DNA of 64,000 bases, taken from NCBI GenBank assembly GCA_964252035.1, contig OZ176213.1; one strand, written 5' to 3'. This DNA is from Podarcis erhardii. Taxonomy: Eukaryota. Every line of letters starts with the position of its first letter. The first letter of the stretch is position 1. Positions 170 to 18,300 of the stretch are shown here, piece by piece. Position numbers and translations under genes: made by a program. Below the pieces are notes generated by a model. It was given only the letters and a program-made list of their open reading frames with translations. It searched no databases and was not told the origin of the DNA.

Positions 170-556
170 TCAGATAAGCTCCATCTTGAACTGGCTGAAG
201 CTTGGCAAGGGTGGCGAGGGGTCAGCCACGTTGTAAGGAGTACAGGAGGCATGGGCAGGGACCGCCCCATGGCCAACAGTGGAGCTGAGCTGCTGCAGCG
301 TCATGAGAAGCTCCTGTTGGAAGCGCTGCTGCTGCTCCTGTTGGCGTTCCAGTCGGCACTGGCGCTCCAGCACCATATGCACAGCCTGCGCAAGCTTCTG
401 GACCTCAGTGTGCACTGTGTCCAGTTTCTCTGCAAGTGGCTGAGGGTTGGCAGCAGGGACCAAGGAGGTAGTCATCTGAGCTCCCCACTGAGGATTCTGA
501 TGAACTGGAGGGTAGGTGGGGTTAAATGTACAAGTCTGAGTACTGGCATCTTTAGT
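170..556 (-). CDS. HTH/coiled-coil gene, coding exon 4 (TKDASTQT...FKMELI*)
   Basis: Acceptor ccctcccctttctag|ACT; frame open from 556 to the stop at 170; extends the supplied ORF 170..475. Confidence 0.8.
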   Translation of the reverse strand, partial: TKDASTQTCTFNPTYPPVHQNPQWGAQMTTSLVPAANPQPLAEKLDTVHTEVQKLAQAVHMVLERQCRLERQQEQQQRFQQELLMTLQQLSSTVGHGAVPAHASCTPYNVADPSPPLPSFSQFKMELI

Positions 557-3500
557 CTAGAAAGGGGAGGGGGAATCCAAAAAAGAAGAAGAAATGGCGT
601 GTTAAGTTGTGGGTGAACATATCAGACGACACAGCGATTCTTCAAACAGCTCTTGTTTATTCACAGGCCAGGACAGAACTGAACTGAAGGGCTCAGTCAG
701 CCTGCTTATATAGAGCTCCAGTACCACGTTACTGTAACAACTTTCTAAAACTTTCCAATCATTGAACGTCACTTTCGATCCTTCATTTGCATAACTATCT
801 ACAGTATCCCCCTGCTGGGCCAGGGTGTGAACTTCAGTACATAACACGGCAGGATCACCAAATAGTTATTCTCTTCTTCAATTAAAGACTCTAGCTCAGG
901 AGTCACAAACATCACAGGTGCCAGGATGCCTCCTGTGGCATTTGCAGCAGGTCTTCATAAATATCCCCTCTGAAATCCACCAAACACCAGGGATTGTTAG
1001 CTCTTCCTGCTCAATTCCTTGCACCGTCTCAGCTTCTCCTACTTTGAACATGCCCCCTTAAAACATGTCAATATTTCATTGGGTTGGCATCTTACCCTCT
1101 GTTCAGAGGAGAGGTGCAAAGAGGTTCTCTCTGCGAGTGAGCATGGTGGTGGCTGATGTAGCTGCCTTCCCCCCCCCCTTGTTGCGAGGGGAGAGGGAGA
1201 GCACGCCCACACCATTTTGTGGCCCTGTCTCTGTCTCTTCCCTTTCAGATGATGTGGCAATTACCCCATGCCCTCAAGGCAGCCATTTTGTAACTGATGC
1301 CCATGGCACTTTCTCAAAATTCCAAGCATTCCCCAAAAGGTCAGTGGCCCCCTGCCCTAACTCTTCTCCAACTGGGTTCTGAAGTTCTTACAGACTCTCT
1401 TACCACCTCAATGTGCACAATCCTTCAACTCCCACCCCCGCCCCCCAAAAAACAATGAACCACCTTTTGCTTGGGAGCCTTTTCTCTTTCTGACATGCAT
1501 CGCTATTAAAGCATGCAAACTCCGCATCACTTACGTCTGCAGAGCAGCCAGAAGATGCCATCGGGACAGGAGTTGTCCCCCTGGAAGGATGGCCAGTTGG
1601 CTGCACCCTCACCATGAAGGGCAAACTGGGTGTAGAACCAGATGAATTCTGCCCATTCTGTACATTTGCCTAACGGACAAGGGAGAAGACTCAGTTTCAG
1701 CTTAAGAACTGTACTTCCAGAATATGAAAAAAGTGCAGGTGGGAACATTCATTCAGTTCAAGGGCCACATTCCGTTCTGGGAGCGAACTACATCCCAGCC
1801 ATGCAAAAGGCAAGAGGGTCGTCTCCAGTCACTTTCAATATGTCTACTCTGAGTAATACTTGGCTAGATACAATGCAGACGTTTGGCACTCATGCAGCAC
1901 TTCTATCCATCCTGCATCCACCCTGTGTATATTTTGCTCTAGGAGGCTTGGTCTGGTCACAATCGAGTATACAACTTCCAAAGTTAACACTAAATACATT
2001 ATTTCTGAATAAATTTAAAAAAATTAAAATTTGTTCAGTAGCACCTTAGAGACCAACTAAGTTTGTTCTGGGTATAAGCTTTCATGTGCATGCACACTTT
2101 GACTGCATCAGACCAACACGGCTATCTACATTATTTCTGCTAAATGAGCCACCATAACCACTAGAGGGCCATGAAAATTTGTGTCCCGGGCTTTTTAGAC
2201 TGGTCTACCCATGCGCTATCTGAATCCAAAGGGAAAAAATCAGCTCTCATACCCCACTGAAGGACACCAGACCCATCCTTTCTAATGCTCTAGGGGTTGC
2301 ATGAAACTACTCAAGAATAATAGGGCTAACTTGGGATTCTATTCTGGGCTTCCAATCATTTCTGTCTGTCTCTCCCTCCCTCTCTCTGTGTGCCTTTCCC
2401 ACCTTTTTCTGGAGATGAATGGCCCGGCCTACGATCTTCCTTTTCACAATCAAGGCAGGATTCCGGGCAGGTGGCAGAAAGGCCTTCCCTTTGCCATTCA
2501 GATTATGCTGAGGAATTGCAGGTGCAAATGGAGTCAAGCAGCTAGGCGACACAGGTTTTGGCCCTGGGCAGTTGTCACCTGGAAGAGAAAAAGAGAAAGA
2601 AGTGAAGGTGCCTCAGTGTCATCCCAACAGAGAAAAGCAGGGTAGCAAACTAATATGGTGCCTCCCAGATGTGCTGATGGGGACACATGCCAGGAATGTG
2701 TGATACCATTGCTAAACATCTGCACTGGCTGCTCATCTGCTGCCAAGCCAGGATTAGGGTCCTTGTATTGATTTACAAAGCCCTGAACAACTTAGGTCCA
2801 GGGTACCTTAGGGATGGCCTGAACCCTTAGATTGATCACTGAGATCATCTGCAGGTGTGTTGATAGCTGTCCCCCAAGTTGGTGAGGCTCATTTGACATC
2901 AACACGAAACAGAGCCTTCAGTGTTATTGTCAGCCCAGTGCTATGGAATACTCTGTCCATGGAGACTTGGCAGCTGCCTTCTGTTTCAACCTTTAAACAC
3001 CTGAAAACTTTTATCTTCCTCCAAGCCTATGCAGACAATTAAGAATGCATCTTCCCATAATTGTTAATTGATTCATTTATTTTTAATGTGTTCCTTAGTG
3101 CTGTCAATCGCCTTTGAACTCTCCATCAGTGCTTCTTAGCCGATAGGCACTGACAGGAAGCCCCACTTGCAAAGAAATTTGCAGCAAAGTCTGTACCTGC
3201 CCAACACCAATGTTCACATACAAGTGTGGGGCAAGTGGGAGCAGTTTCTGAGGAACAGCCTCATGGGCCAAATTGGGACATGTGCCAGGACGAATTAGGC
3301 CCATGGGTTTGGTGCCTTAAGGCCCATGGGTTTGCTGCCTTAAGCCCTGGCCATTAAGGGCTTCATAGGTCACACGGCACTCAGAACCAAAATAGAAGCT
3401 ATTACCCCTTAGAAGTGCTCAGTGGCGTAGCGTGGGGGGTGCAGGGGGGGCCGGCCGCACCGGGCGCAACATCTGGGGTTAGGGCAAATCCACGGGTTAG

Positions 3501-4264
3501 GGGGCGCAAATCCACGGGTTAGGGGGCGCAAATCCACGGGTTAGGGGGCGCAAATTACTTGCCTTGCCCCGGGTGCTGACAACCCACGCTACGCCACTGG
3601 AAGTGCTACTAAACCGTCACTCACCCTCCAGCCCAGAAACCCATAGAAAGTGGACCCCTGACAGCCTGCACTTGCAGAGGGTGGTTGCTGTGAGCAAAGG
3701 TTGTGGGAGTTTTCTTAAACAGGCCTCAAGCAGAAGCCAGCAGCACATGTGAACAAGGAGGCTGTGCAAAGCTTTACCCATATTCTGGCCCAGCTGAGAT
3801 CCGCTGGAGAGGCCCTCATGGGAGGCACTCTGCTTCCCAAACGGCCCTCCATCCTTGCTCAAGGAAGTCACGCTAATTATTTTGATGTGCTCCTCGCCAT
3901 CACAATGGCCGTTACAAGGCGGCACCTCATAGCTTGGGCCAACTCCTGCCACAGAGCCAGCAGGTTCTCTCTGCCCATGGCGCTCAGTCTCGTTTTCCTG
4001 CAGTAACTTCCAGAGCTGGTTGTCCTCCCAGCCAGCTTGGTCCACAAGAGTCTTCCTGCTTCCATTCTCGAGAGCAGGTTGCAGAAAAGAGACAGGTGGG
4101 GGCTGGCTGGGCTCAACATTCTTGCGCTTAAGGAACAGGTAGATGGCTTGCGGGGTGACCCGGATGTTGTCCAGCTCCAGCACCTTTTTGATCTTGCGGA
4201 AACTCAAGCCGGCTTTGCGCAGCTCCACAATCCGTTTCTTGGCATGGTCGTCTAAGCGACCCAT
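170..4264 (-). CDS. Uncharacterised HTH / coiled-coil protein, 394 aa, join(complement 3778-4264, 2403-2578, 1535-1669, 170-556)
   Basis: ATG at 4264 lies in a perfect Kozak context (CCACCATGG). All three introns are GT-AG with pyrimidine-rich acceptors. Phases 1/0/0 join into one open frame of 162+59+45+128 codons. N-terminus MGRLDDHAKKRIVELRKAGLSFRKIKKVL...VTPQAIYLFLKRK is HTH-like; the C-terminus has heptad repeats. Confidence 0.8.
1535..1669 (-). CDS. HTH/coiled-coil gene, coding exon 3 (ANVQNG...GCSAD)
   Basis: Acceptor ttctcccttgtccgttag|, donor |GTAAGT, 135 nt, phase 0-0. Confidence 0.75.
2030..2129. mobile_element. Penelope-like element fragment
   Basis: agtagcaccttagagaccaactaagtttgttctgggtataagctttc...gaccaacacggcta; same family as the copies at 19306 and 27157. 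Confidence 0.6.
2403..2578 (-). CDS. HTH/coiled-coil gene, coding exon 2 (GDNCPGP...RNPALIVKRKIVGRAIHLQKK)
   Basis: Acceptor ttctttctctttttctcttccag|, donor AAG|GTGGGA, 176 nt, phase 1-0. Confidence 0.75.
2760..3060 (+). mobile_element. L2-clade LINE 3' fragment
   Basis: ORF 2857..3042 RAFSVIVSPVLWNTL...STFKHLKTFIF resembles the L2 ORF2 C-terminus (RAFS..AP.LWN.LP...FK..LKT.LF). Confidence 0.6.
3420..3599. mobile_element. hAT-type MITE with internal 22-bp tandem repeat
   Basis: TIRs cagtggcgtagcgtggg / cccacgctacgccactg; 8-bp TSD gaagtgct at 3412-3419 and 3600-3607; internal repeat gggttagggggcgcaaatccac about 3 times. Confidence 0.85.
3778..4264 (-). CDS. HTH/coiled-coil gene, coding exon 1 (HTH domain)
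   Basis: Start of ORF 3617..4264 with strong Kozak; donor G|GTAAAG at 3777. Confidence 0.85.
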
Positions 4265-5599
4265 GGTGGGGCCAAGGACTTTGGCCTCTTCCTTTAGTCA
4301 AATGGACAGTGGCTACATTCCAGAAGAATACGCCGTTTTCAAGGTAGGGTACGTTAACAGCCAACAGAGACCTTGATGTGGACGCTGCTAGATTAGCAGG
4401 TCAAACAGGCAAAATGGTACTGGGGAAACAACCAGTGTTTCTTCCAAGGTCAAATGGTCACAAAGACTGTTGCACCATCCTATAGAAAGCCACTGCAAAA
4501 GTTAAATCCATTCTGAAATCCAGCAGCGATCACCAGCTCCTGAGCTGGCCAATGGTCTTTTCCATGGAACAAACACTTGTGTATTTTTGGATTTATATCT
4601 CCCCTTCAGAAGATGGGCAGGGAGTTAAAATATGTATATCCTTTTCTGTAGCAAAGGAAGACTCCAATAATGCTTGTGCAGGAGTTAAAAGCATCAGTCT
4701 AACCCTGTCCACTCAATGCCCACACAAGAAGAGAAGCCATGCTGGGGAAATCCCTCTCTGATTTCTTGCAGTTTTCTGTTTCTTAAGCAGAACTTTGGGC
4801 TGGAAGAGAAAAGAAGAAAAAACAACAACAACCAAGGATAGAATAAAATTATTCTCATTAAGAAAGAAAGAGAGAATAGGGCTCTATCTGGTGGATGCTT
4901 CTGAACACCTAAATGGACCATCTGGCTGAGGATTAGGCAGCGTTCTAACTTCAGGTTTCCCCTATGATCACACAAACCAGGGTAGCTACCCTGTGGCCTT
5001 CCAGGTGGTGTTGGAGCACAACTCCCATCATCCCCAGCTGTTGGCCATGCTGGTGAAGCCGATGGGAGTTGGGAGCCCAATGACACTGGTCTTATTGCGT
5101 ACATTTGTTTCTAACATCTGTTGATTTTAACGATAATTTGGTCATTTTATTATGTCTGCTGTTTTCGTTGCTATTTTATACCATTTTATGGAAAGTACTT
5201 AAGGATTTTATTGCAAACTAAGTGAATATAAATGCTGCTAAATAAATAAATGCCTCTGGAGGGCCACACTGTTAGCCAGCCCCACAGAACTTAAACAAAT
5301 TCCAAGGACAAAGCAAGTTAAAGTGACAGTATTACAGGATAAGCAGCTGTGCACTTATCAAAAGCACTGTGAATTGTTTACTGTAGCAGGGCCTGGGGGC
5401 TCAGATGGCAGCAAAGTAAAATCAAGCAAGGTTGACCACCAAGTGGAACAGAGGCATGCTCTGCCAGAGATCTTGACACCCCAGTTCGGGGGACGGGGAC
5501 GGGACTTTTCTTAAACTAAGGGCCTCATTCCCATCTGGGCAGGGGCTTCAGAAGCGGGCAGAGCAATGGATGCAGATTTTACCTTTGCAGAGTAGACTA

Positions 5600-9070: not shown

Positions 9071-9114
9071 GGATAAACGTTTGCTAATGTTTGTTTGTTA
9101 GGCAAGTCTCCCCT

Positions 9115-9432
9115 TACATTTTCCCAATAGTGATGTATGGAAGTGAAAGCTGGACCATAAAGATGGTTGATCGCAGAAGAATTGATGCTTTTGAATTATG
9201 GTGTTGGAGGAGACTCTTGAGAGTCCCATGGACTGCAAGAAGATCAAACCTCTCCATTCTTAAGGAAATCAGCCCTGAGTGCTCACTGGAAGGACAGATC
9301 GTGAAGCTGAGGCTCCAATACTTTGGCCACCTCATGAGAAGAGAAGACTCCCTGGAAAAGACCCTGATGTTGGGAAAGATGGAGGGCACAAGGAAAAGGG
9401 GACGACAGAGGATGAGATGGTTGGACAGTGCT
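9115..9432 (+). mobile_element. RTE-BovB LINE, 3' ORF fragment
   Basis: Translation FPIVMYGSESWTIK..DRRRIDAFELWCWRRLLRVPWTARRSNLSILKEISPECSLEG..LQYFGHLMRREDSLEKTLMLGK is the characteristic BovB C-terminus. Confidence 0.9.
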
Positions 9433-11019
9433 AAAGTTAACTATCAGCTTCTACTCCTCAGCATTAACCCATGCTTACTCTACTCAGACCTCTGCCATTT
9501 TTTAAAACAGTTTCCTCCAATCTTGCAGCATCTGACATGGTTTTAAACCACCATCCCCGCCTCCCTATTAGTGGCCCTCCCTTCTCTCTTTTCCATGCCC
9601 TGGCCACTGCTGTTTACTTTTGCTTCCCTATCCTGTCCTGACAAGATAGAAATCCTGGATTGTGATGCAGCACTACAAACCCTCCCACGGGGTCTCTGTG
9701 ACTGCACTACATTCTTAAATATTTATTACAGTACATGCTTGCCAGACATTTGAGGCCCTTGAGCATATTTGTAAACCACAGCTAGGCATTGTGCCACCTA
9801 GGCATTGTGCCACCTGCTATGATAGAATGCTTCCTTCAAACCTATTTTCAGCTGGTGGGGGTACCCTACGGGCACAAATGTGCCTGCAGCTGAGACATTG
9901 ATGACCTTTAAGTGATTATAACATTTTACATTTAATAAATAAATATGGTCGGTTCCAAACAAAATTAGCTGAACTTGTGTCCCATTGAAATTAGTCAAAC
10001 AAGTTTGTCATGATTTAACTCAATTCCCACTGAAATCTATGGGAATTTAGACTGCCATTCTAATTCTACTGGGAGAAAGTCTCACTAAATTAAATAGAAC
10101 TTACTCCCAAGTAGATATGGTCAGAATTACACTATAAATTGAACGAAGTCTAGATACAGTACATCCCACAATGAGGCGTGTGGTGGTTGCTTTGTTTTAT
10201 AGCTGGTAAGTAGATTTAGTTTGTTGTACTGGACATTAGTCATGTCATGTCATTAAACTAACATATTCACAGGTAGCTGTGTTGGTTAGCTACCTATAAA
10301 GAAAAAAACCTCTAGAAATAACAGTGGTGTAATAACTTTTTTGGAACAAACTAAAAGTCATAATACATAAATAGGTTATGTGTCTATCTGTACAACCTGC
10401 CAACTAAAGATAGCATTTCATATATTTTATGAAGTTGACCCTACTCCATGAAAGCTCACACCAGAGTAAACACTGTTTGCCACATGCCTCTTTTATTTTG
10501 CTGTTTTAATCCTTGCCTGCCTGCCACACAGCTGCTTATTGATTACATTTTATCCTAACCTTCCTCCAAGGAATGCAGGGCATTTATGAAGTATCCTATT
10601 TTATCCATGCAACAGCCTTGTGTGGTAGGTTAGGCGCTGCCTACCGAACCTCACAGGGTTTGTGCAAGGATAAAACTGGTAAGGGAGAAAACAATGCATG
10701 CCACCTTGAGCTCCTTGCAGGAAGAATAACGACATTAAAGGGATCTGGACAGGCTCTAAGCAGTCTCCTTTAGCCTCCCGTGCCAGGGGTCTCAGCAGGC
10801 CTTCCCATTTGAGTTTATTAAAATGTTTAATGTCCAAAGTGCTAGGCATTTGGAAAAAAATCCTACACGAGCTAATAATTCTTTCAACTTCCATTTCCCC
10901 TTTCCATTATCATGTTTTAAGAACACCTAAGTGGGTTGTTGTTGGGTTCTCCCCACCCTCCTAAAAAACCTTCTTTTTTATCTCCATGGGGCCTTAAACT
11001 ACCACAACAAAAAGGGTTG

Positions 11020-14285: not shown

Positions 14286-15255
14286 TACCCTCCAAATTTT
14301 GTTGGCTTGCCAACTCCCATCACCCCAACCATTGGCTATGCTGGCTGGGGCTGATGGGAGTTGGAGTCCAAGAACATCTGGAAGACCACAGGTTTTACCA
14401 CCCCTGTTGTGTGATCTGAGGATAGGGTTTTGCGCTGTGCTTCTGCTCTGTTACATTTAATAGTCTCTGGGGGTGACCCTGGAGCTGAAATTGCAGACTT
14501 AACTGCAGCACTCTATATCAATACAAATTAAAGCTTAGCAGTAGTAATGAGAAACTGCATTAAGAATTTAGGAAGAGCAGTAGAAATCCTTATAAACAAT
14601 TAAAATCTACTATAGTTTCCCTGGGACTTAAAATGCTTTCTTGCTACTACTGTACCACAATGTCCTGTTGAGGTACCTTGCTTTCTATTGCAGAGGTAGC
14701 CGACGTGGTGTTCTCCAGATGTTGCTGGACTATAACTCCAATCATCCATGAGAGTTGGCTTTGATGACAGGCTGATGGGAGTTGGAGTTCAATTCATATG
14801 GAGGGCATCATGTTGGCTACCACTGTCCTGTTGTAATGCTGCATATCTTAAGGAAAAGTACTAAGAAATTCAGGCTGAAAAACTCTTGTGTGCTTTGCTG
14901 TGTGTTCTTCCTCCTTTTGAAGGGTGATTAGAAAGAAAATTCAAATGCTCTGTGTAAACACACTCTTAAGTTGTTCAGCAGATGCGGTTTTCAAATGGGA
15001 AATAACAAGCCACACAGAAGTGTGTGAACTATAATGCTTTGCATGAAGCTTGTGCCTTTTCTTGTGAAGTGGGTTTTCTTTTCCTCTGCCTATATGTTAA
15101 CTGTCTCATATCCCTTTTATCTTGTCACTAGGCTGCTCTTTGGAGTTTATTGCATTCGCTTAGGGATCGTTTCTCAGAATCAAGGAGTTAGAAGTAAGCT
15201 TTCAGATAAGTGAGCCCCCCCAAAAAAGTGCCGCTTTTGGACTCGGAAGGGGAAA

Positions 15256-15326
15256 ATGGAGCTGTCAGGAATGAAAAAGAAGAGTTTGCTAGGAATCAAA
15301 GAAAATAATAAAAAGTCCAGCACTAG
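15256..15326 (+). CDS. RNPS1: RNPS1 coding exon (long-isoform N-terminus)
   Basis: MELSGMKKKSLLGIKENNKKSST, donor AG|gtaata. Confidence 0.85.
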
Positions 15327-18300
15327 GTAATAATTGTCTGAATGTTCAAGGCCTCACCCCTCTTGGGGGATCTGTGCAGACTCCTAGGGATTTCCCATCA
15401 AGCATGAGGAATTAGAAATGCATCTTCCCTCCTTTTCATAATCTCCATATATTCCACACCATTGGCTTTCTTTCATGAAGCCGCTCCATAGTGTAAACAC
15501 TGGGGATTTGTCTCTTAGCATCTTTGTAGCAGTGACATTTCTTGCTTTTGTTGCAACTGAAATTGCGGGGTTGGAAATTGAGTTTCTGAACCTTTGTACA
15601 TTAAAGGGCTCCCTCTCCTACCAAGCGCAAGGACCGTACAGAAGAAAAGTCCAAGGACCGATCCAAAGACAAGCCAGCTACAAAGGAGTCAAGCGAAAAG
15701 GATCGTGGGCGCGACAAAACTCGCAAGAGGCGCAGCGCCTCCAGTGGTAGTAGCAGCACCAGGTAAGCAGAGTCAGGAATTCTTGGGTTTCTGAAGGCCG
15801 TTTCAAGGACCAGGCCTTCCCAAGGATTCTTAATCGGCAGTTAAAAAATGATGCCGCCATGCTCAGGCAGAGGAAACCTTTTAACTCTTCAGATGTTGGA
15901 TACAGGGATGGAGTTGTGGTGGCTGTCTCACCATGCCCTACTTGTGAGATTCCCAGGAATGTAGGGCAGTTAAGCTTGAGAACTTAAAATACGCCCCTTG
16001 ATGTGAACCAGCAGGTCGGTTGTAAGTTGAGTGAAGCAGTAATGCTGAACACATACTTGACTTCAGATCCTCTTCTCTGATTGAGATATTGGGGGTTTGT
16101 GTGTGGTTTCGTACAGGAGGTCTGTTTGCACCCCAATGATCTGTTTGGAGGGGAGGCCCTTCTTGGTGTTCATCTTTAGAAGATGTGTGTCCTGCATTTA
16201 CAAAGGGGTGTGTGTGTGTTATGGGCACTTCAACTGTGGAACACCCTCCAAAGGGAGGTAATTTCAGAGACTGTTAAAACATTTTTCTTTGCCTGAGCAT
16301 TTTAGATGGTGGCATTTTTAGTGGGTTGAATGGTTTTTCTCATTCTTCATTAAATTGGTTTTATAAGGTAATTGTAATTTGAGGTGAATTTTGTATATTG
16401 CTCTGAAATCTGTTTTTCGACAAAGGACCATTTATACAATAAGTGAAATGATTTAGAAAGATCATCACCTCTGCATTGGGAAGTGGCCAGGTTTGGGTTG
16501 GAACTGCAAAAGACAATGGTGTGTTCTTTCCAACACCTTCAACAGTTATTGGGGGTTATCGGGAGAACACCCTTGCTGCCATTAGTCTCTTGCATGACAC
16601 CTTCTCTGCCAGGTCTCGCTCCAGTTCCACATCCAGTTCTGGTTCTAGCTCCAGCACCGGCTCCAGCAGTGGCTCCAGCTCCTCCTCCGCGTCAAGCCGC
16701 TCTGGGAGTTCAAGCACATCCCGCAGTTCCAGCTCCAGCAGCTCATCGGGTTCTCCAAGCCCATCTCGACATCGGCATGACAACAGGAGGCGTTCCCGTT
16801 CAAAGTGAGTCTAGAGTACCGGAGGCTACTGGCTACTTTATTTCCATTGGCCTTGATAAGTGCTTCCTGTAAGACAAGGGTGGCGAACACTTTTCAGCTC
16901 AAAGGCCATGTTTCTTTCTTGGGGAGGGGCACATGCTAGCAAACTTGGTAGATAGTATCAAATAAAGGTCCCTCCAAGCCCTACTGAATTTTAGTTAAGC
17001 CTCAATAGTTACTCACTTTTAGCATAATTATTTCTTGCAAACTATAAATGGCCTGTAGTTGTTGCACCAGCCACTTTTTTTTAAGTAACAAATTTAGCAA
17101 GGAATACAGAATAAGATCATTGGTGTTTTTTTGTCATGCTGCATTGATTGGAGTTAATGAAGAGCTTGGGTTGCAAATCCATACGTTTAAATTTTTGTTT
17201 GACACTTTTTGTTTATTTCCACCAGGTCTAAACCGCTCAAGAGAGATGAAAAGGAACGGAAGAGAAGGAGTCCATCACCCAAACCTACCAAAGTACATGT
17301 TGGGAGACTCACCAGAAATGTGACGAAGGTAACAGATGCCTGTTGTTCACTCGTACCCAGAAAGAAGTAAAAAGGCCAAAGGGGGTGGGGAAACATAAGT
17401 CCCCCAGAACCCATGGTCTGACTCAGTATAAGACAGCTTCCTGTAAGTCCATATTGAATATGAATGCTGGGAATGCTGTTGACCAAGGGTCCCTCCCAGT
17501 ATTGATACACTAGATCTCTATGGGGAGAGTGCTGTTGTGCTCAGGCCCTGCTTGCGAGTGGCTTGACCCCTGTGAGAACAGTGTGCTGGACTAGATGGGC
17601 CACTGGCCTGGTCCAGCAGGCTCTTCTTATTCTCCTATAGATATAGCTGAGTAAAGTTCAGGTAACCTGGGAAGCAAAACTGTTGAAGCATTTCAATATG
17701 TAACTGAATGGTCTTCACTCTTTCTGTTCAAATCCAGTTAAAGGGGTGTGTGTGTGTGTTGCTGCTGCTTCCGCCGTTGCCCATTCAGTGTTTTGTTGTT
17801 ATGAAGATGGAAGGTAATGAACATTTGCCATGAGCGTTAAGGAGCTTGCTTTTCCTCTTCCAGGACCACATAATGGAAATATTTTCCACTTATGGAAAGA
17901 TCAAAATGATTGATATGCCAGTCGACAGACTCAACCCACACCTCTCAAAGGGTTATGCATATGTAGAATTTGAGAATCCAGATGATGCTGAGAAGGCACT
18001 GAAGCACATGGATGGAGGTGGGTTTCAGAAGCTGGCTGCATTGTTAAGAGGTTTGACTCCTACATGACTGAAAAATCTGTAATTTGAGATGATCCCCCCA
18101 TTAAAGCAAGGGTTTCAGATTTCCCAAAAGTGATATAGGTTCTACCAGCTAGGAGGGCTCTTTGCAGAGCACACCTGAACAAAATAAGGCTCTAGATTCT
18201 TCCAAGTTTTACTCTTATAATAATACAAATATATCATTTAACTGTATGACTTCTTTTTAATAAATCAACCTCGTCTGCCAGGAATATGGGCTGGTGGGAC

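What the first reader, a model, noticed from the sequence alone, without database searches (positions are those of the whole stretch)
170..4264. Unnamed 4-exon gene with a transposase-like HTH but no transposase catalytic domain: candidate domesticated DNA-binding protein
Seen in sequence: a perfect Kozak ATG and three GT-AG introns whose phases (1,0,0) join into an uninterrupted 394-aa frame. The ORF track shows it only as disconnected pieces. The N-terminal ~48 aa (KKRIVELRKAGLSFRKIKKVLELDNIRVTPQAIYLFLKRK) follow the pattern of Tc1/IS630 paired-type HTH domains: RxxIVEL..AG...KKI, then V[ST]xxAIYxFL as the recognition helix. The rest is low-complexity linker, a basic hydrophobic block (RNPALIVKRKIV, possible NLS) and a coiled coil. 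No DDE/D motif and no flanking TIRs are visible. Inference: an intron-acquired, host-domesticated transposase DNA-binding domain acting as a transcription or chromatin factor. I recognise no human gene at this position (human RNPS1 is flanked by ECI1 and ABCA3), so it may be restricted to non-mammalian vertebrates.
Basis: partly seen in the sequence, partly recalled or inferred. Interest (0 to 1): 0.78.

Follow-up and report, generated by a model that had tools for sequence, protein, structure and literature searches.

The report
Ancient domesticated Tc1-transposase HTH gene
This is a real four-exon lizard gene, conserved in bony vertebrates from teleosts to marsupials but not seen in placental mammals, whose first 47 residues are a DNA-binding helix-turn-helix inherited from a Tc1-type transposase; no source names the family and no paper was found on it.

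Summary
On the minus strand, four exons (4264-3778, 2578-2403, 1669-1535, 556-170) with GT-AG introns of phases 1, 0, 0 give a 394-codon frame behind a CCACCATGG start.

The gene is unnamed but already annotated. Orthologues are listed as "uncharacterized protein LOC…" in other lacertids, squamates, turtles, birds, amphibians, marsupials, monotremes, lungfish, bichir, paddlefish and teleosts. No placental mammal appears.

The position is syntenic, head-to-head with RNPS1. In wombat the gene lies between the RNPS1-side neighbour and an ABCA gene.

A koala transcript contig carries the spliced reading frame. Exon 3 is an old cassette exon.

The transposase reading is supported:
- A profile of residues 1-60, searched against 1.84 billion proteins, finds outside the family short ORFs at E 2e-5 to 1e-3. 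Two of the three I looked up sit just upstream of DDE_3 (DD34E, Tc1-like) transposase ORFs.
- hhalign gives 99% probability and 41-43% identity, from Met1 to residue 47-49.
- No RED subdomain, DDE domain or terminal inverted repeats remain.

HTH dN/dS is about 0.04. The rest of the protein is disordered apart from short conserved motifs and a long C-terminal helix.

Function as a dimeric DNA-binding regulator is inferred, not shown. This is a new member of a known kind (domesticated transposase genes).

The parts
3778..4264 (-). Exon 1 (start codon 4264-4262 in CCACCATGG; 162 full codons plus 1 base; phase-1 donor)
   Evidence: aligns to residues 1-162 of lacertid isoform X2 proteins and to Varanus, wombat and crow genomic exon 1
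4115..4264 (-). Three-helix HTH, residues 1-50 (helices 6-17, 22-31, 38-48), homologous to the PAI subdomain of Tc1-like transposases
   Evidence: AlphaFold pLDDT 88-94 over residues 11-50, 80 over 1-10; 31 invariant columns in 29 species; Pfam HTH_SB 29/29 members, best E 7e-5, below cut-off; hhalign to transposase N-termini 99.3%; dN/dS 0.044 against Varanus
3995..4033 (-). Conserved tryptophan motif G-W-E-D-x-Q-L-W-x-L-L (residues 78-90) in the disordered linker
   Evidence: W79 invariant and Q83 nearly invariant from lizard to teleosts; not alignable to the transposase RED subdomain
3860..3895 (-). Conserved acidic-then-hydrophobic motif E-E-x-I-K-I-[IV]-S-V-T-S-L (residues 124-135); fits the psi-x-psi-psi pattern of SUMO-interacting motifs (inference)
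   Evidence: I127 and L135 invariant; I129, S131, V132 and S134 at 90% or more; also present in fish members
2579..3777 (-). Intron 1 (GT...AG, phase 1); holds a small inverted-repeat element at 3420-3599
2403..2578 (-). Exon 2
   Evidence: residues 164-222 of lacertid isoform X2; dN/dS 0.20 against Varanus
2403..2477 (-). Conserved basic block L-P-P-A-R-N-P-A-L-I-V-K-R-K-I-V-G-R-A-I-H-L-Q-K-K (candidate NLS or basic amphipathic helix)
   Evidence: N203, A205, L206, V208, K210, K211, V213, D214, A216, L219, K221 and K222 at 90% or more; recognisable in fish members; short helix 207-210 at low confidence
1670..2402 (-). Intron 2 (GT...AG, phase 0)
1535..1669 (-). Exon 3, a 45-codon cassette exon skipped in isoform X2 of other lacertids
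   Evidence: orthologous segment in gecko (z 12), Pogona, turtle, tinamou, opossum, platypus and salamander proteins; no match in Varanus
557..1534 (-). Intron 3 (GT...AG, phase 0)
170..556 (-). Exon 4 with stop codon TGA at 172-170
   Evidence: dN/dS 0.25 against Varanus
272..442 (-). Long single helix (residues 261-317 of the Zootoca orthologue), Q/E/R-rich, candidate coiled-coil dimerisation region
   Evidence: AlphaFold pLDDT about 97; conserved E-R-Q-x-R-L-E-R-Q-Q-E core from tetrapods to teleosts
173..199 (-). C-terminal motif F-S-Q-F-K-M-E-L-I; the last residues keep hydrophobic-K-x-E (the SUMO-acceptor consensus; inference)
   Evidence: F345, K346, M347, E348 and L349 at 90% or more in tetrapods; fish members end in I-K-V-E, F-K-V-E, V-K-A-E or F-K-A-E plus 2 residues

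Best explanation
This is a single-copy, four-exon host gene of a lacertid lizard. It belongs to an unnamed family present across bony vertebrates.

Its first 47 or so residues, counted from the initiator methionine, descend from the PAI (first) helix-turn-helix subdomain of a Tc1-like (DD34E, DDE_3) transposase. The RED subdomain, the catalytic domain and the terminal inverted repeats are gone.

The HTH is joined to a mostly disordered region with four short, deeply conserved motifs, then a long C-terminal helix, then a C-terminal hydrophobic-K-x-E motif.

Shown: the gene structure, orthology, synteny, the transposase homology of the HTH, purifying selection, and a spliced transcript in koala.

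Inferred: the protein enters the nucleus, pairs through the long helix, and binds specific DNA sites with two HTH recognition helices, acting as a transcription or chromatin regulator. The SIM-like motif and the C-terminal SUMO-type site may tie it to SUMO-dependent repression.
For: - Gene model and boundaries.
- Orthologues in squamates, turtles, birds, amphibians, marsupials and monotremes, one contig each. Salamander, lungfish, bichir, paddlefish and teleosts.
- Synteny: RNPS1 N-terminal exons lie head-to-head at about 15.2-15.8 kb. Wombat has a 306-aa gene, then the focal gene, then an ABCA gene. Varanus and crow share a downstream gene for a lamin-tail-domain (LTD) protein.
- Transcript: koala contig L003 holds the uninterrupted 339-codon frame.
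- HTH fold: with Tc3 transposase among the tied top structural matches (Z 6.6-6.7).
- Transposase homology: Pfam HTH_SB in 29 of 29 members. Library-wide hits at E 2.4e-5 to 9.7e-4 go to ORFs that start M-[GPAS]-[RK]-L. P0190 is in frame with a DDE_3 domain across one stop, with DD34E spacing counted by me. P0175 lies 580 nt upstream of a DDE_3 ORF. hhalign gives 99.2-99.3% probability and 41-43% identity over residues 1-47/49.
- Selection: HTH omega is 0.044 against Varanus, and lizard versus marsupial differ by 2-3 amino acids against 27-29 synonymous-only codons. Other parts give omega 0.20-0.40.
- No DDE domain and no TIRs.
Against: - The Pfam HTH_SB score (about 21 bits) is far below the curated cut-off of 43, and it covers only helices 1-2.
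- Fold searches cannot tell Tc3 from GcrA, SANT/Myb or small-terminase HTH domains. All have Z below 8 and Foldseek E of at least 0.6.
- The PDB sequence search found nothing.
- The transposase-side alignment A3 was chosen from the hits of the family profile, so the hhalign E-value is not independent. Only the library-wide E-values are.
- The host organisms of those transposase contigs are unknown, and no TIRs were found around the L005 copy.
- There is no RNA evidence from this lizard itself.
- DNA binding, dimerisation, nuclear localisation and SUMO links are untested.
Confidence: 0.7

Rival explanations
1. The gene is real and conserved, but its HTH is an ordinary host tri-helical domain (Myb/SANT-like, PAX-derived or other). 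The resemblance to transposase PAI domains would then reflect a shared fold and basic composition, not descent from a transposon.
For: Structural matches are generic and tied: GcrA Z 7.8, CoREST SANT 6.7, Tc3 6.7, Myb 6.4. The Pfam hit is below the gathering score. Tandem-HTH proteins of resolvase type (HTH_7) also score in the big search.
Against: The best single-stretch non-family hits are all N-terminal ORFs that align from Met1 through helix 3 at about 40% identity. Two of the three I looked up lie next to DDE_3 domains. HTH_SB is the top Pfam family in every member, while PAX appears in 1 of 29 at E 0.099. The tandem-HTH hits owe their E-values to summed repeats.
Confidence: 0.12
2. The gene is a domesticated transposase fragment, but the HTH no longer binds DNA. 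The protein would work as a scaffold or adaptor, for example in a SUMO-dependent or coiled-coil assembly, with the HTH acting as a protein- or RNA-binding module.
For: More than two thirds of the protein is predicted disordered, with short linear motifs typical of interaction hubs. A single PAI subdomain without RED and without the GRPR-type linker binds DNA weakly in known Tc1 and PAX proteins (established knowledge, not tested here).
Against: Helix 3, the recognition helix, is the most invariant part: T37, P38, Q39, A40, Y42, L45, K46 and R47 are invariant or nearly so. The adjacent helix could supply avidity by pairing two HTHs. Basic residues flank the HTH.
Confidence: 0.15
3. It is a dead transposon copy or a mis-predicted ORF chain, not a functional gene.
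For: Decayed copies exist in some bird-like contigs (L009, with stops in the first and last exons; P0135), so the gene can be lost.
Against: Orthologues are single-copy and syntenic across lineages that include both ray-finned fishes and tetrapods. Exon structure is conserved from lizard to marsupial. HTH omega is about 0.04. There is a spliced transcript in koala. There are no TIRs and no DDE domain.
Confidence: 0.02

Closest known systems
PAI subdomain of the bipartite (paired-like) DNA-binding domain of Tc1/DD34E transposases (Sleeping Beauty, Tc3; Pfam HTH_SB, HTH_Tnp_Tc3)
   Same: Three-helix HTH at the extreme N-terminus. The pattern is R-x-R-I-V-x-L ... G-x-S-x-R-x-I ... V-[ST]-x-Q-A-[IL]. 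There is 41-43% profile identity to N-termini of DDE_3 transposases from Met1. Tc3 is among the top structural matches.
   Different: There is no GRPR-type linker, no RED subdomain, no DDE_3 catalytic domain and no TIRs. The gene is single-copy and syntenic. The Pfam gathering score is not reached.
Host-transposase fusion and domesticated transposase genes of vertebrates (Cosby et al., bioRxiv 10.1101/2020.05.07.082677; for example SETMAR, and pogo-derived CENPB, TIGD, JRK and POGK from PMC7386202)
   Same: A transposase DNA-binding domain is kept under purifying selection inside a host gene with host-type exons. Tc1/mariner is the commonest donor superfamily (36.1% of fusion genes).
   Different: The transposase part is only about 47 residues and escapes Pfam thresholds. 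The partner is not a KRAB, SCAN or SET domain but a disordered region plus a long helix with no known family. The family is older (bony vertebrates) and is missing from placental mammals. RNPS1 does not occur in that paper's main text; its gene tables were not checked.
PAX paired domain
   Same: From established knowledge, the paired domain is regarded as a Tc1-like transposase DNA-binding domain recruited by a host gene. Here PAX-6 and Prd paired domains appear among weak Foldseek matches, and related transposase N-termini hit Pfam PAX weakly.
   Different: PAX keeps both PAI and RED subdomains (about 128 residues), whereas this family keeps PAI only. Pfam PAX matches 1 of 29 members at E 0.099.

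Membership tests
Autonomous Tc1/mariner transposon | DDE/DDD catalytic (RNase H-like) domain | tested here: not met
   No DDE_3 or other catalytic family in any exon. The AlphaFold model has no globular domain beyond the HTH.
Autonomous Tc1/mariner transposon | Terminal inverted repeats flanking the coding region | tested here: not met
   No inverted repeats bracket 170-4264. Only small unrelated pairs were found.
Autonomous Tc1/mariner transposon | Multiple dispersed copies per genome | tested here: inconclusive
   Annotated orthologues sit on one contig each and in conserved synteny. The lizard genome itself could not be searched.
Autonomous Tc1/mariner transposon | Bipartite PAI + RED DNA-binding domain | tested here: not met
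   PAI is present. The alignment stops at residue 47 and RED is not detectable.
Pfam HTH_SB (PF25787) | Score at or above the gathering cut-off (43 bits) | tested here: not met
   18.8-21.3 bits for the window protein. All 29 members match, but the best E is 7e-5 and only profile positions 11-36 are covered.
Domesticated transposase-derived host gene | A domain homologous to a transposase domain | tested here: met
   Library-wide E of 2.4e-5 to 9.7e-4 to N-terminal ORFs. Two of the three looked up (P0190, P0175) adjoin DDE_3 domains; the third, P0189, has no DDE_3 in the next ORF. hhalign gives 99%.
Domesticated transposase-derived host gene | Orthologues at a conserved genomic position across distant taxa | tested here: met
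   The gene is next to RNPS1 in the lizard and the wombat. Varanus and crow share the same downstream LTD gene. The family is present from teleosts to marsupials. Fish synteny was not checked.
Domesticated transposase-derived host gene | Purifying selection on the transposase-derived part | tested here: met
   Omega is 0.044 (lizard against Varanus) and 0.04-0.06 (squamates against crow). Lizard versus marsupial shows 2-3 replacements against 27-29 synonymous-only codons.
Domesticated transposase-derived host gene | Transcribed and spliced | tested here: inconclusive
   Met for koala: contig L003 carries the joined frame. Several 1.2-2.2 kb Logan contigs hold full-length frames. No RNA data for this lizard were available.
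PAX (paired box) family | Complete paired domain recognised by Pfam PAX | tested here: not met
   1 of 29 members matches, at E 0.099.

The most novel reading that the evidence does not exclude
The family would be an unrecognised vertebrate DNA-binding regulator, born in or before the common ancestor of ray-finned and lobe-finned fishes, when a host gene kept only the PAI helix-turn-helix (start codon included) of a Tc1 transposase. That would be a second capture parallel to the origin of the PAX paired domain.

It would act as a coiled-coil dimer with SUMO-dependent partners, and was later lost in placental mammals. That loss would explain why no human or mouse study has met it.
Probability: 0.4. 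Interest if true: 0.7.

Novelty: new member of a known kind. Interest (0 to 1): 0.55.

Why it matters
Domesticated transposase DNA-binding domains are a recognised source of vertebrate transcription factors. Catalogues are built from Pfam-detectable domains and centre on genes found in human and mouse.

This family falls outside both. Its transposase part is 47 residues and sub-threshold, and placental mammals appear to lack the gene. It has therefore stayed an "uncharacterized LOC" in hundreds of genomes, even though its HTH is almost invariant from teleosts to marsupials.

The gene is present in Xenopus and in Danio (D. aesculapii was listed; D. rerio was not checked by name), so it can be tested directly. 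It gives a clean case of minimal domain capture (PAI only, start codon included) and of lineage-specific loss of an otherwise highly constrained gene.

Tried and rejected
- A sequence search of the HTH profile against PDB chains gave nothing below E 0.3.
- Foldseek and VIA fold searches, on the full model and on the HTH alone, returned only generic tri-helical HTH matches that do not discriminate origin.
- Pfam on exons 2, 3 and 4 gave no credible family. The SKA2, CFAP141 and similar hits on exon 4 are coiled-coil noise at E above 0.01.
- I tested whether the conserved W-motif is a relic of the RED subdomain. hhalign stops at residue 47, so this was rejected.
- I looked for close lacertid DNA to compute dN/dS. 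The isoform X2 products of Zootoca, Lacerta and Podarcis are not on record as gene products, so Varanus, wombat/koala and crow were used.
- Exon 3 has no detectable counterpart in the Varanus intron.
- TIRs were sought around the related transposase copy in L005 and none was clear.
- Literature searches by LOC identifiers and by topic found no paper on the family.
- Earlier notes of this scan had nothing near this place.
- I suspected P0160 might be a placental-mammal relic. It is instead most like bird sequences.

Left out on purpose: the joined 394-residue product of the window was never assembled or searched as one string. Each exon was used by reference, and the database orthologue P0001 (Zootoca isoform X2) served as the full-length proxy for alignment and structure prediction.

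No fetched contig was taken for human.


Full report
OBSERVATION

- The ATG at 4264 sits in CCACCATGG. An in-frame stop lies 11 codons upstream (the stop-to-stop piece runs 3620-4297).
- Exon 1 ends at 3778 and is followed by GTAAAG (phase 1).
- Exon 2 is 2578-2403, preceded by a pyrimidine tract and AG, and followed by GTGGGA (phase 0).
- Exon 3 is 1669-1535, bounded by AG and GTAAGT (phase 0).
- Exon 4 is 556-170 and ends in TGA.
- The sum is 1185 nt, which is 394 codons plus the stop.

The joined product was not assembled or searched as one string. Exons were used by reference, and a database orthologue served as the full-length proxy.

IS IT A GENE?

A word-based search with exon 1 returned 241 proteins. 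The best is 96% identical (Zootoca vivipara, "uncharacterized protein LOC118092826 isoform X2"). It was followed by Varanus, Pogona, turtles, marsupials, platypus and echidna, caecilians, frogs and many birds. Nearly all are labelled uncharacterized, and the few other names are automatic '-like' labels.

The 90% cluster of the best hit also holds Lacerta agilis and Podarcis muralis. The window matches none of them exactly, so it comes from another lacertid.

The 350-residue isoform X2 proteins align with exon 1 (1-162), exon 2 (164-222) and exon 4 (223-350).

Exon 3 is not an artefact. Its A-N-V-Q-N-G-Q ... L-P-F-x-V-x-V-Q-P pattern aligns to the same position in gecko (z = 12 against shuffles), Pogona, turtle, tinamou, opossum, platypus and salamander proteins. 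It is an old cassette exon. It is undetectable in Varanus.

A 2-kb Logan contig (L003) carries the uninterrupted 339-codon frame of the koala protein. Against the wombat genome this frame splits into four blocks, the same exon plan as in the lizard.

DISTRIBUTION AND SYNTENY

A profile of residues 1-60 (A2) was searched with HMMER against 1.84 billion representative proteins and gave 78 hits.

Named members now include Pleurodeles, the lungfish Protopterus, the bichir Erpetoichthys, the paddlefish Polyodon, Scleropages, Megalops and salmonids. A further word search lists well over a hundred teleosts, including Danio, Ictalurus, cichlids and Gadus.

Fish members are longer (470-610 residues) but keep the same order of modules.

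Every unnamed hit is closest to a bird, monotreme, frog or fish member.

No placental mammal appears, where such proteins would be expected to rank beside marsupials.

The window has the first coding exons of RNPS1 at about 15.2-15.8 kb on the plus strand, head-to-head with the gene. I recognised RNPS1 from its N-terminal sequence, from my own knowledge.

In wombat the order is a 306-residue gene, the focal gene, then a 1717-residue ABCA transporter. Varanus and crow share a downstream gene for a lamin-tail-domain (LTD) protein.

ANATOMY

An alignment of 44 orthologues (A1) shows these conserved parts:
- a nearly invariant HTH (31 invariant columns among 29 species in A2);
- a G-W-E-D-x-Q-L-W motif;
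- an acidic E-G-I-K-I-V-S-V-T-S-L motif;
- a basic R-N-P-A-L-I-V-K-K-K-I-V-D-R-A-I-x-L-Q-K-K block;
- V-K-D-A-S-T-Q-T;
- a Q/E/R-rich segment;
- a C-terminal F-x-Q-F-K-M-E-L-[IL].

AlphaFold, run on the Zootoca protein with A1, gives three helices at 6-17, 22-31 and 38-48 (pLDDT 91-95 over residues 11-40, about 83 at either end). It gives one long helix at 261-317 (pLDDT about 97) and disorder elsewhere. The HTH alone folds with mean pLDDT 85.

ORIGIN OF THE HTH

The cheap tests are weak but consistent.
- Pfam's only hit for exon 1 is HTH_SB, the Sleeping Beauty transposase HTH, at E 1.4e-3.
- HTH_SB is the top family for all 29 members tested (best E 7e-5). It is always far below the 43-bit cut-off and covers helices 1-2 only.
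- Fold searches give a generic tri-helical HTH list: GcrA Z 7.8; Tc3 transposase Z 6.7 and 6.6; CoREST SANT, Myb and small terminase at similar values. The tool's own note says such values can be mere common arrangement.

The decisive evidence is the large search. Outside the family, the single-stretch hits (E 2.4e-5 to 9.7e-4 for the whole library) are short ORFs that begin M-[GPAS]-[RK]-L-S. They run through the same three helices and then continue into a P-R-x-G-R-P-R-K-[LI]-T linker and a second HTH. That is the bipartite paired-like domain of Tc1/mariner transposases.

- P0190 lies in frame with a 247-residue segment across one stop codon. That segment matches Pfam DDE_3 (E 4.6e-15) and has F-T-D-E, D-N-D-P-K-H and N-P-I-E with 34 residues between the last two catalytic positions, which makes it DD34E (Tc1-type). 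It occurs on at least eight contigs.
- P0175 lies 580 nt upstream of another DDE_3 ORF.
- P0187 joins the same N-terminus to Tc3-type HTH and BEN domains.

Profile-profile comparison of the family with these N-termini gives 99.2-99.3% probability and 41-43% identity, aligned from residue 1 of both sides to residue 47-49.

A caveat applies. A3 was picked from A2's hits, so the hhalign E-value is not independent. The library-wide E-values are.

With a longer family alignment the match still ends at residue 47. Only the PAI subdomain survives, and the W-motif is not a RED relic.

SELECTION

Values are per exon, by the Nei-Gojobori method.
- Against Varanus: HTH codons 1-52 give omega 0.044 (2 replacements, 11 synonymous-only codons); the exon 1 linker gives 0.40; exon 2 gives 0.20; exon 4 gives 0.25.
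- Lizard against koala or wombat: 2-3 replacements against 27-29 synonymous-only codons in the HTH, with dS saturated.
- Squamates against crow: omega 0.04-0.06.

NOT A TRANSPOSON

No catalytic domain was found. No inverted repeats bracket the gene. Orthologues sit on one contig per genome, in synteny.

MECHANISM

Shown: a constrained N-terminal PAI-type HTH, a constrained long helix, and constrained short motifs.

Inferred:
- nuclear import, or DNA backbone contact, by the basic block;
- pairing through the long helix, so that two recognition helices (T-P-Q-A-I-Y-L-F-L-K-R-K, invariant) read a bipartite site, replacing the lost RED subdomain;
- a regulatory role on transcription or chromatin.

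The I-K-I-V core preceded by acidic residues fits the SUMO-interacting motif pattern. The terminal hydrophobic-K-x-E (F-K-M-E in tetrapods; I-K-V-E, F-K-V-E or V-K-A-E in fishes) fits the SUMO acceptor consensus. Both readings rest on established consensus patterns and are hypotheses.

COMPARISON AND NOVELTY

The closest known things are the PAI subdomain of Tc1/Sleeping Beauty/Tc3 transposases, the PAX paired domain (which keeps PAI and RED), and the host-transposase fusion genes catalogued by Cosby et al. In that catalogue Tc1/mariner supplies 36.1% of events.

No paper was found for this family.

It is a new member of a known kind. It is notable for its age, the minimal size of the captured piece, its sub-threshold Pfam signal, and its apparent loss in placental mammals.

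No contig fetched here was taken for human. The unknown-organism contigs L009-L011 are most like bird sequences.

Noticed in passing
window 3420-3599 (intron 1): A small element of about 180 bp with perfect 17-nt terminal inverted repeats (CAGTGGCGTAGCGTGGG / CCCACGCTACGCCACTG). It encloses about three tandem copies of a unit of roughly 21 nt (…CCCCTAACCCGTGGATTTGCG…). It looks like a MITE inserted in the intron.
   Followed up: no
window about 15214-15763 (+): The first coding exons of RNPS1 (M-E-L-S-G-M-K-K-K-S-L-L-G-I-K-E-N-N-K-K-S-S-T-R, then A-P-S-P-T-K-R-K-D-R…). They lie head-to-head with the focal gene about 11 kb away and match the wombat upstream gene in L002. RNPS1 was recognised from my own knowledge of its N-terminus.
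   Followed up: partly
window 9088-9543 (+): A 152-codon open frame with 70% identity to one place and 40-47% to another in the Varanus locus L001 (18656-18898 and 874-1075). It has no Pfam family and is probably a dispersed repeat shared by squamates.
   Followed up: no
L009 1633-3211 (also L010, L011; Logan contigs, organism unknown): A decayed copy of the gene. It has a 2-residue deletion in helix 1 and in-frame stops in the first and last exons, and it is most similar to bird orthologues. P0135 is another degenerate bird-like copy. The gene seems to be decaying in at least one bird lineage.
   Followed up: partly
L005 7250-7837 (-) and L006 2158-2745 (-); protein P0187: The Tc1-like transposase copies related to the family HTH are followed by a BEN-domain ORF on the other strand in two contigs. 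P0187 joins the same PAI/RED N-terminus directly to a BEN domain. This may be a transposon-carried BEN gene or an independent host-transposase fusion.
   Followed up: no
proteins P0161-P0163, P0165, P0174, P0181 (metagenome contigs): Proteins built of 4-6 tandem copies of an E-L-R-[KE]-x-G-[LM]-S-Y-[RK]-x-I HTH unit (Pfam HTH_7, HTH_23, HTH_32 and HTH_SB). They score against the family profile through summed repeats. Organism and function are unknown.
   Followed up: no
L001 17733-23542 (-) and L004 13713-21786 (-): In Varanus and crow the downstream neighbour is a gene of 1064-1075 residues with a lamin-tail (LTD) domain. In wombat the downstream neighbour is an ABCA transporter. The interval differs between sauropsids and marsupials.
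   Followed up: no
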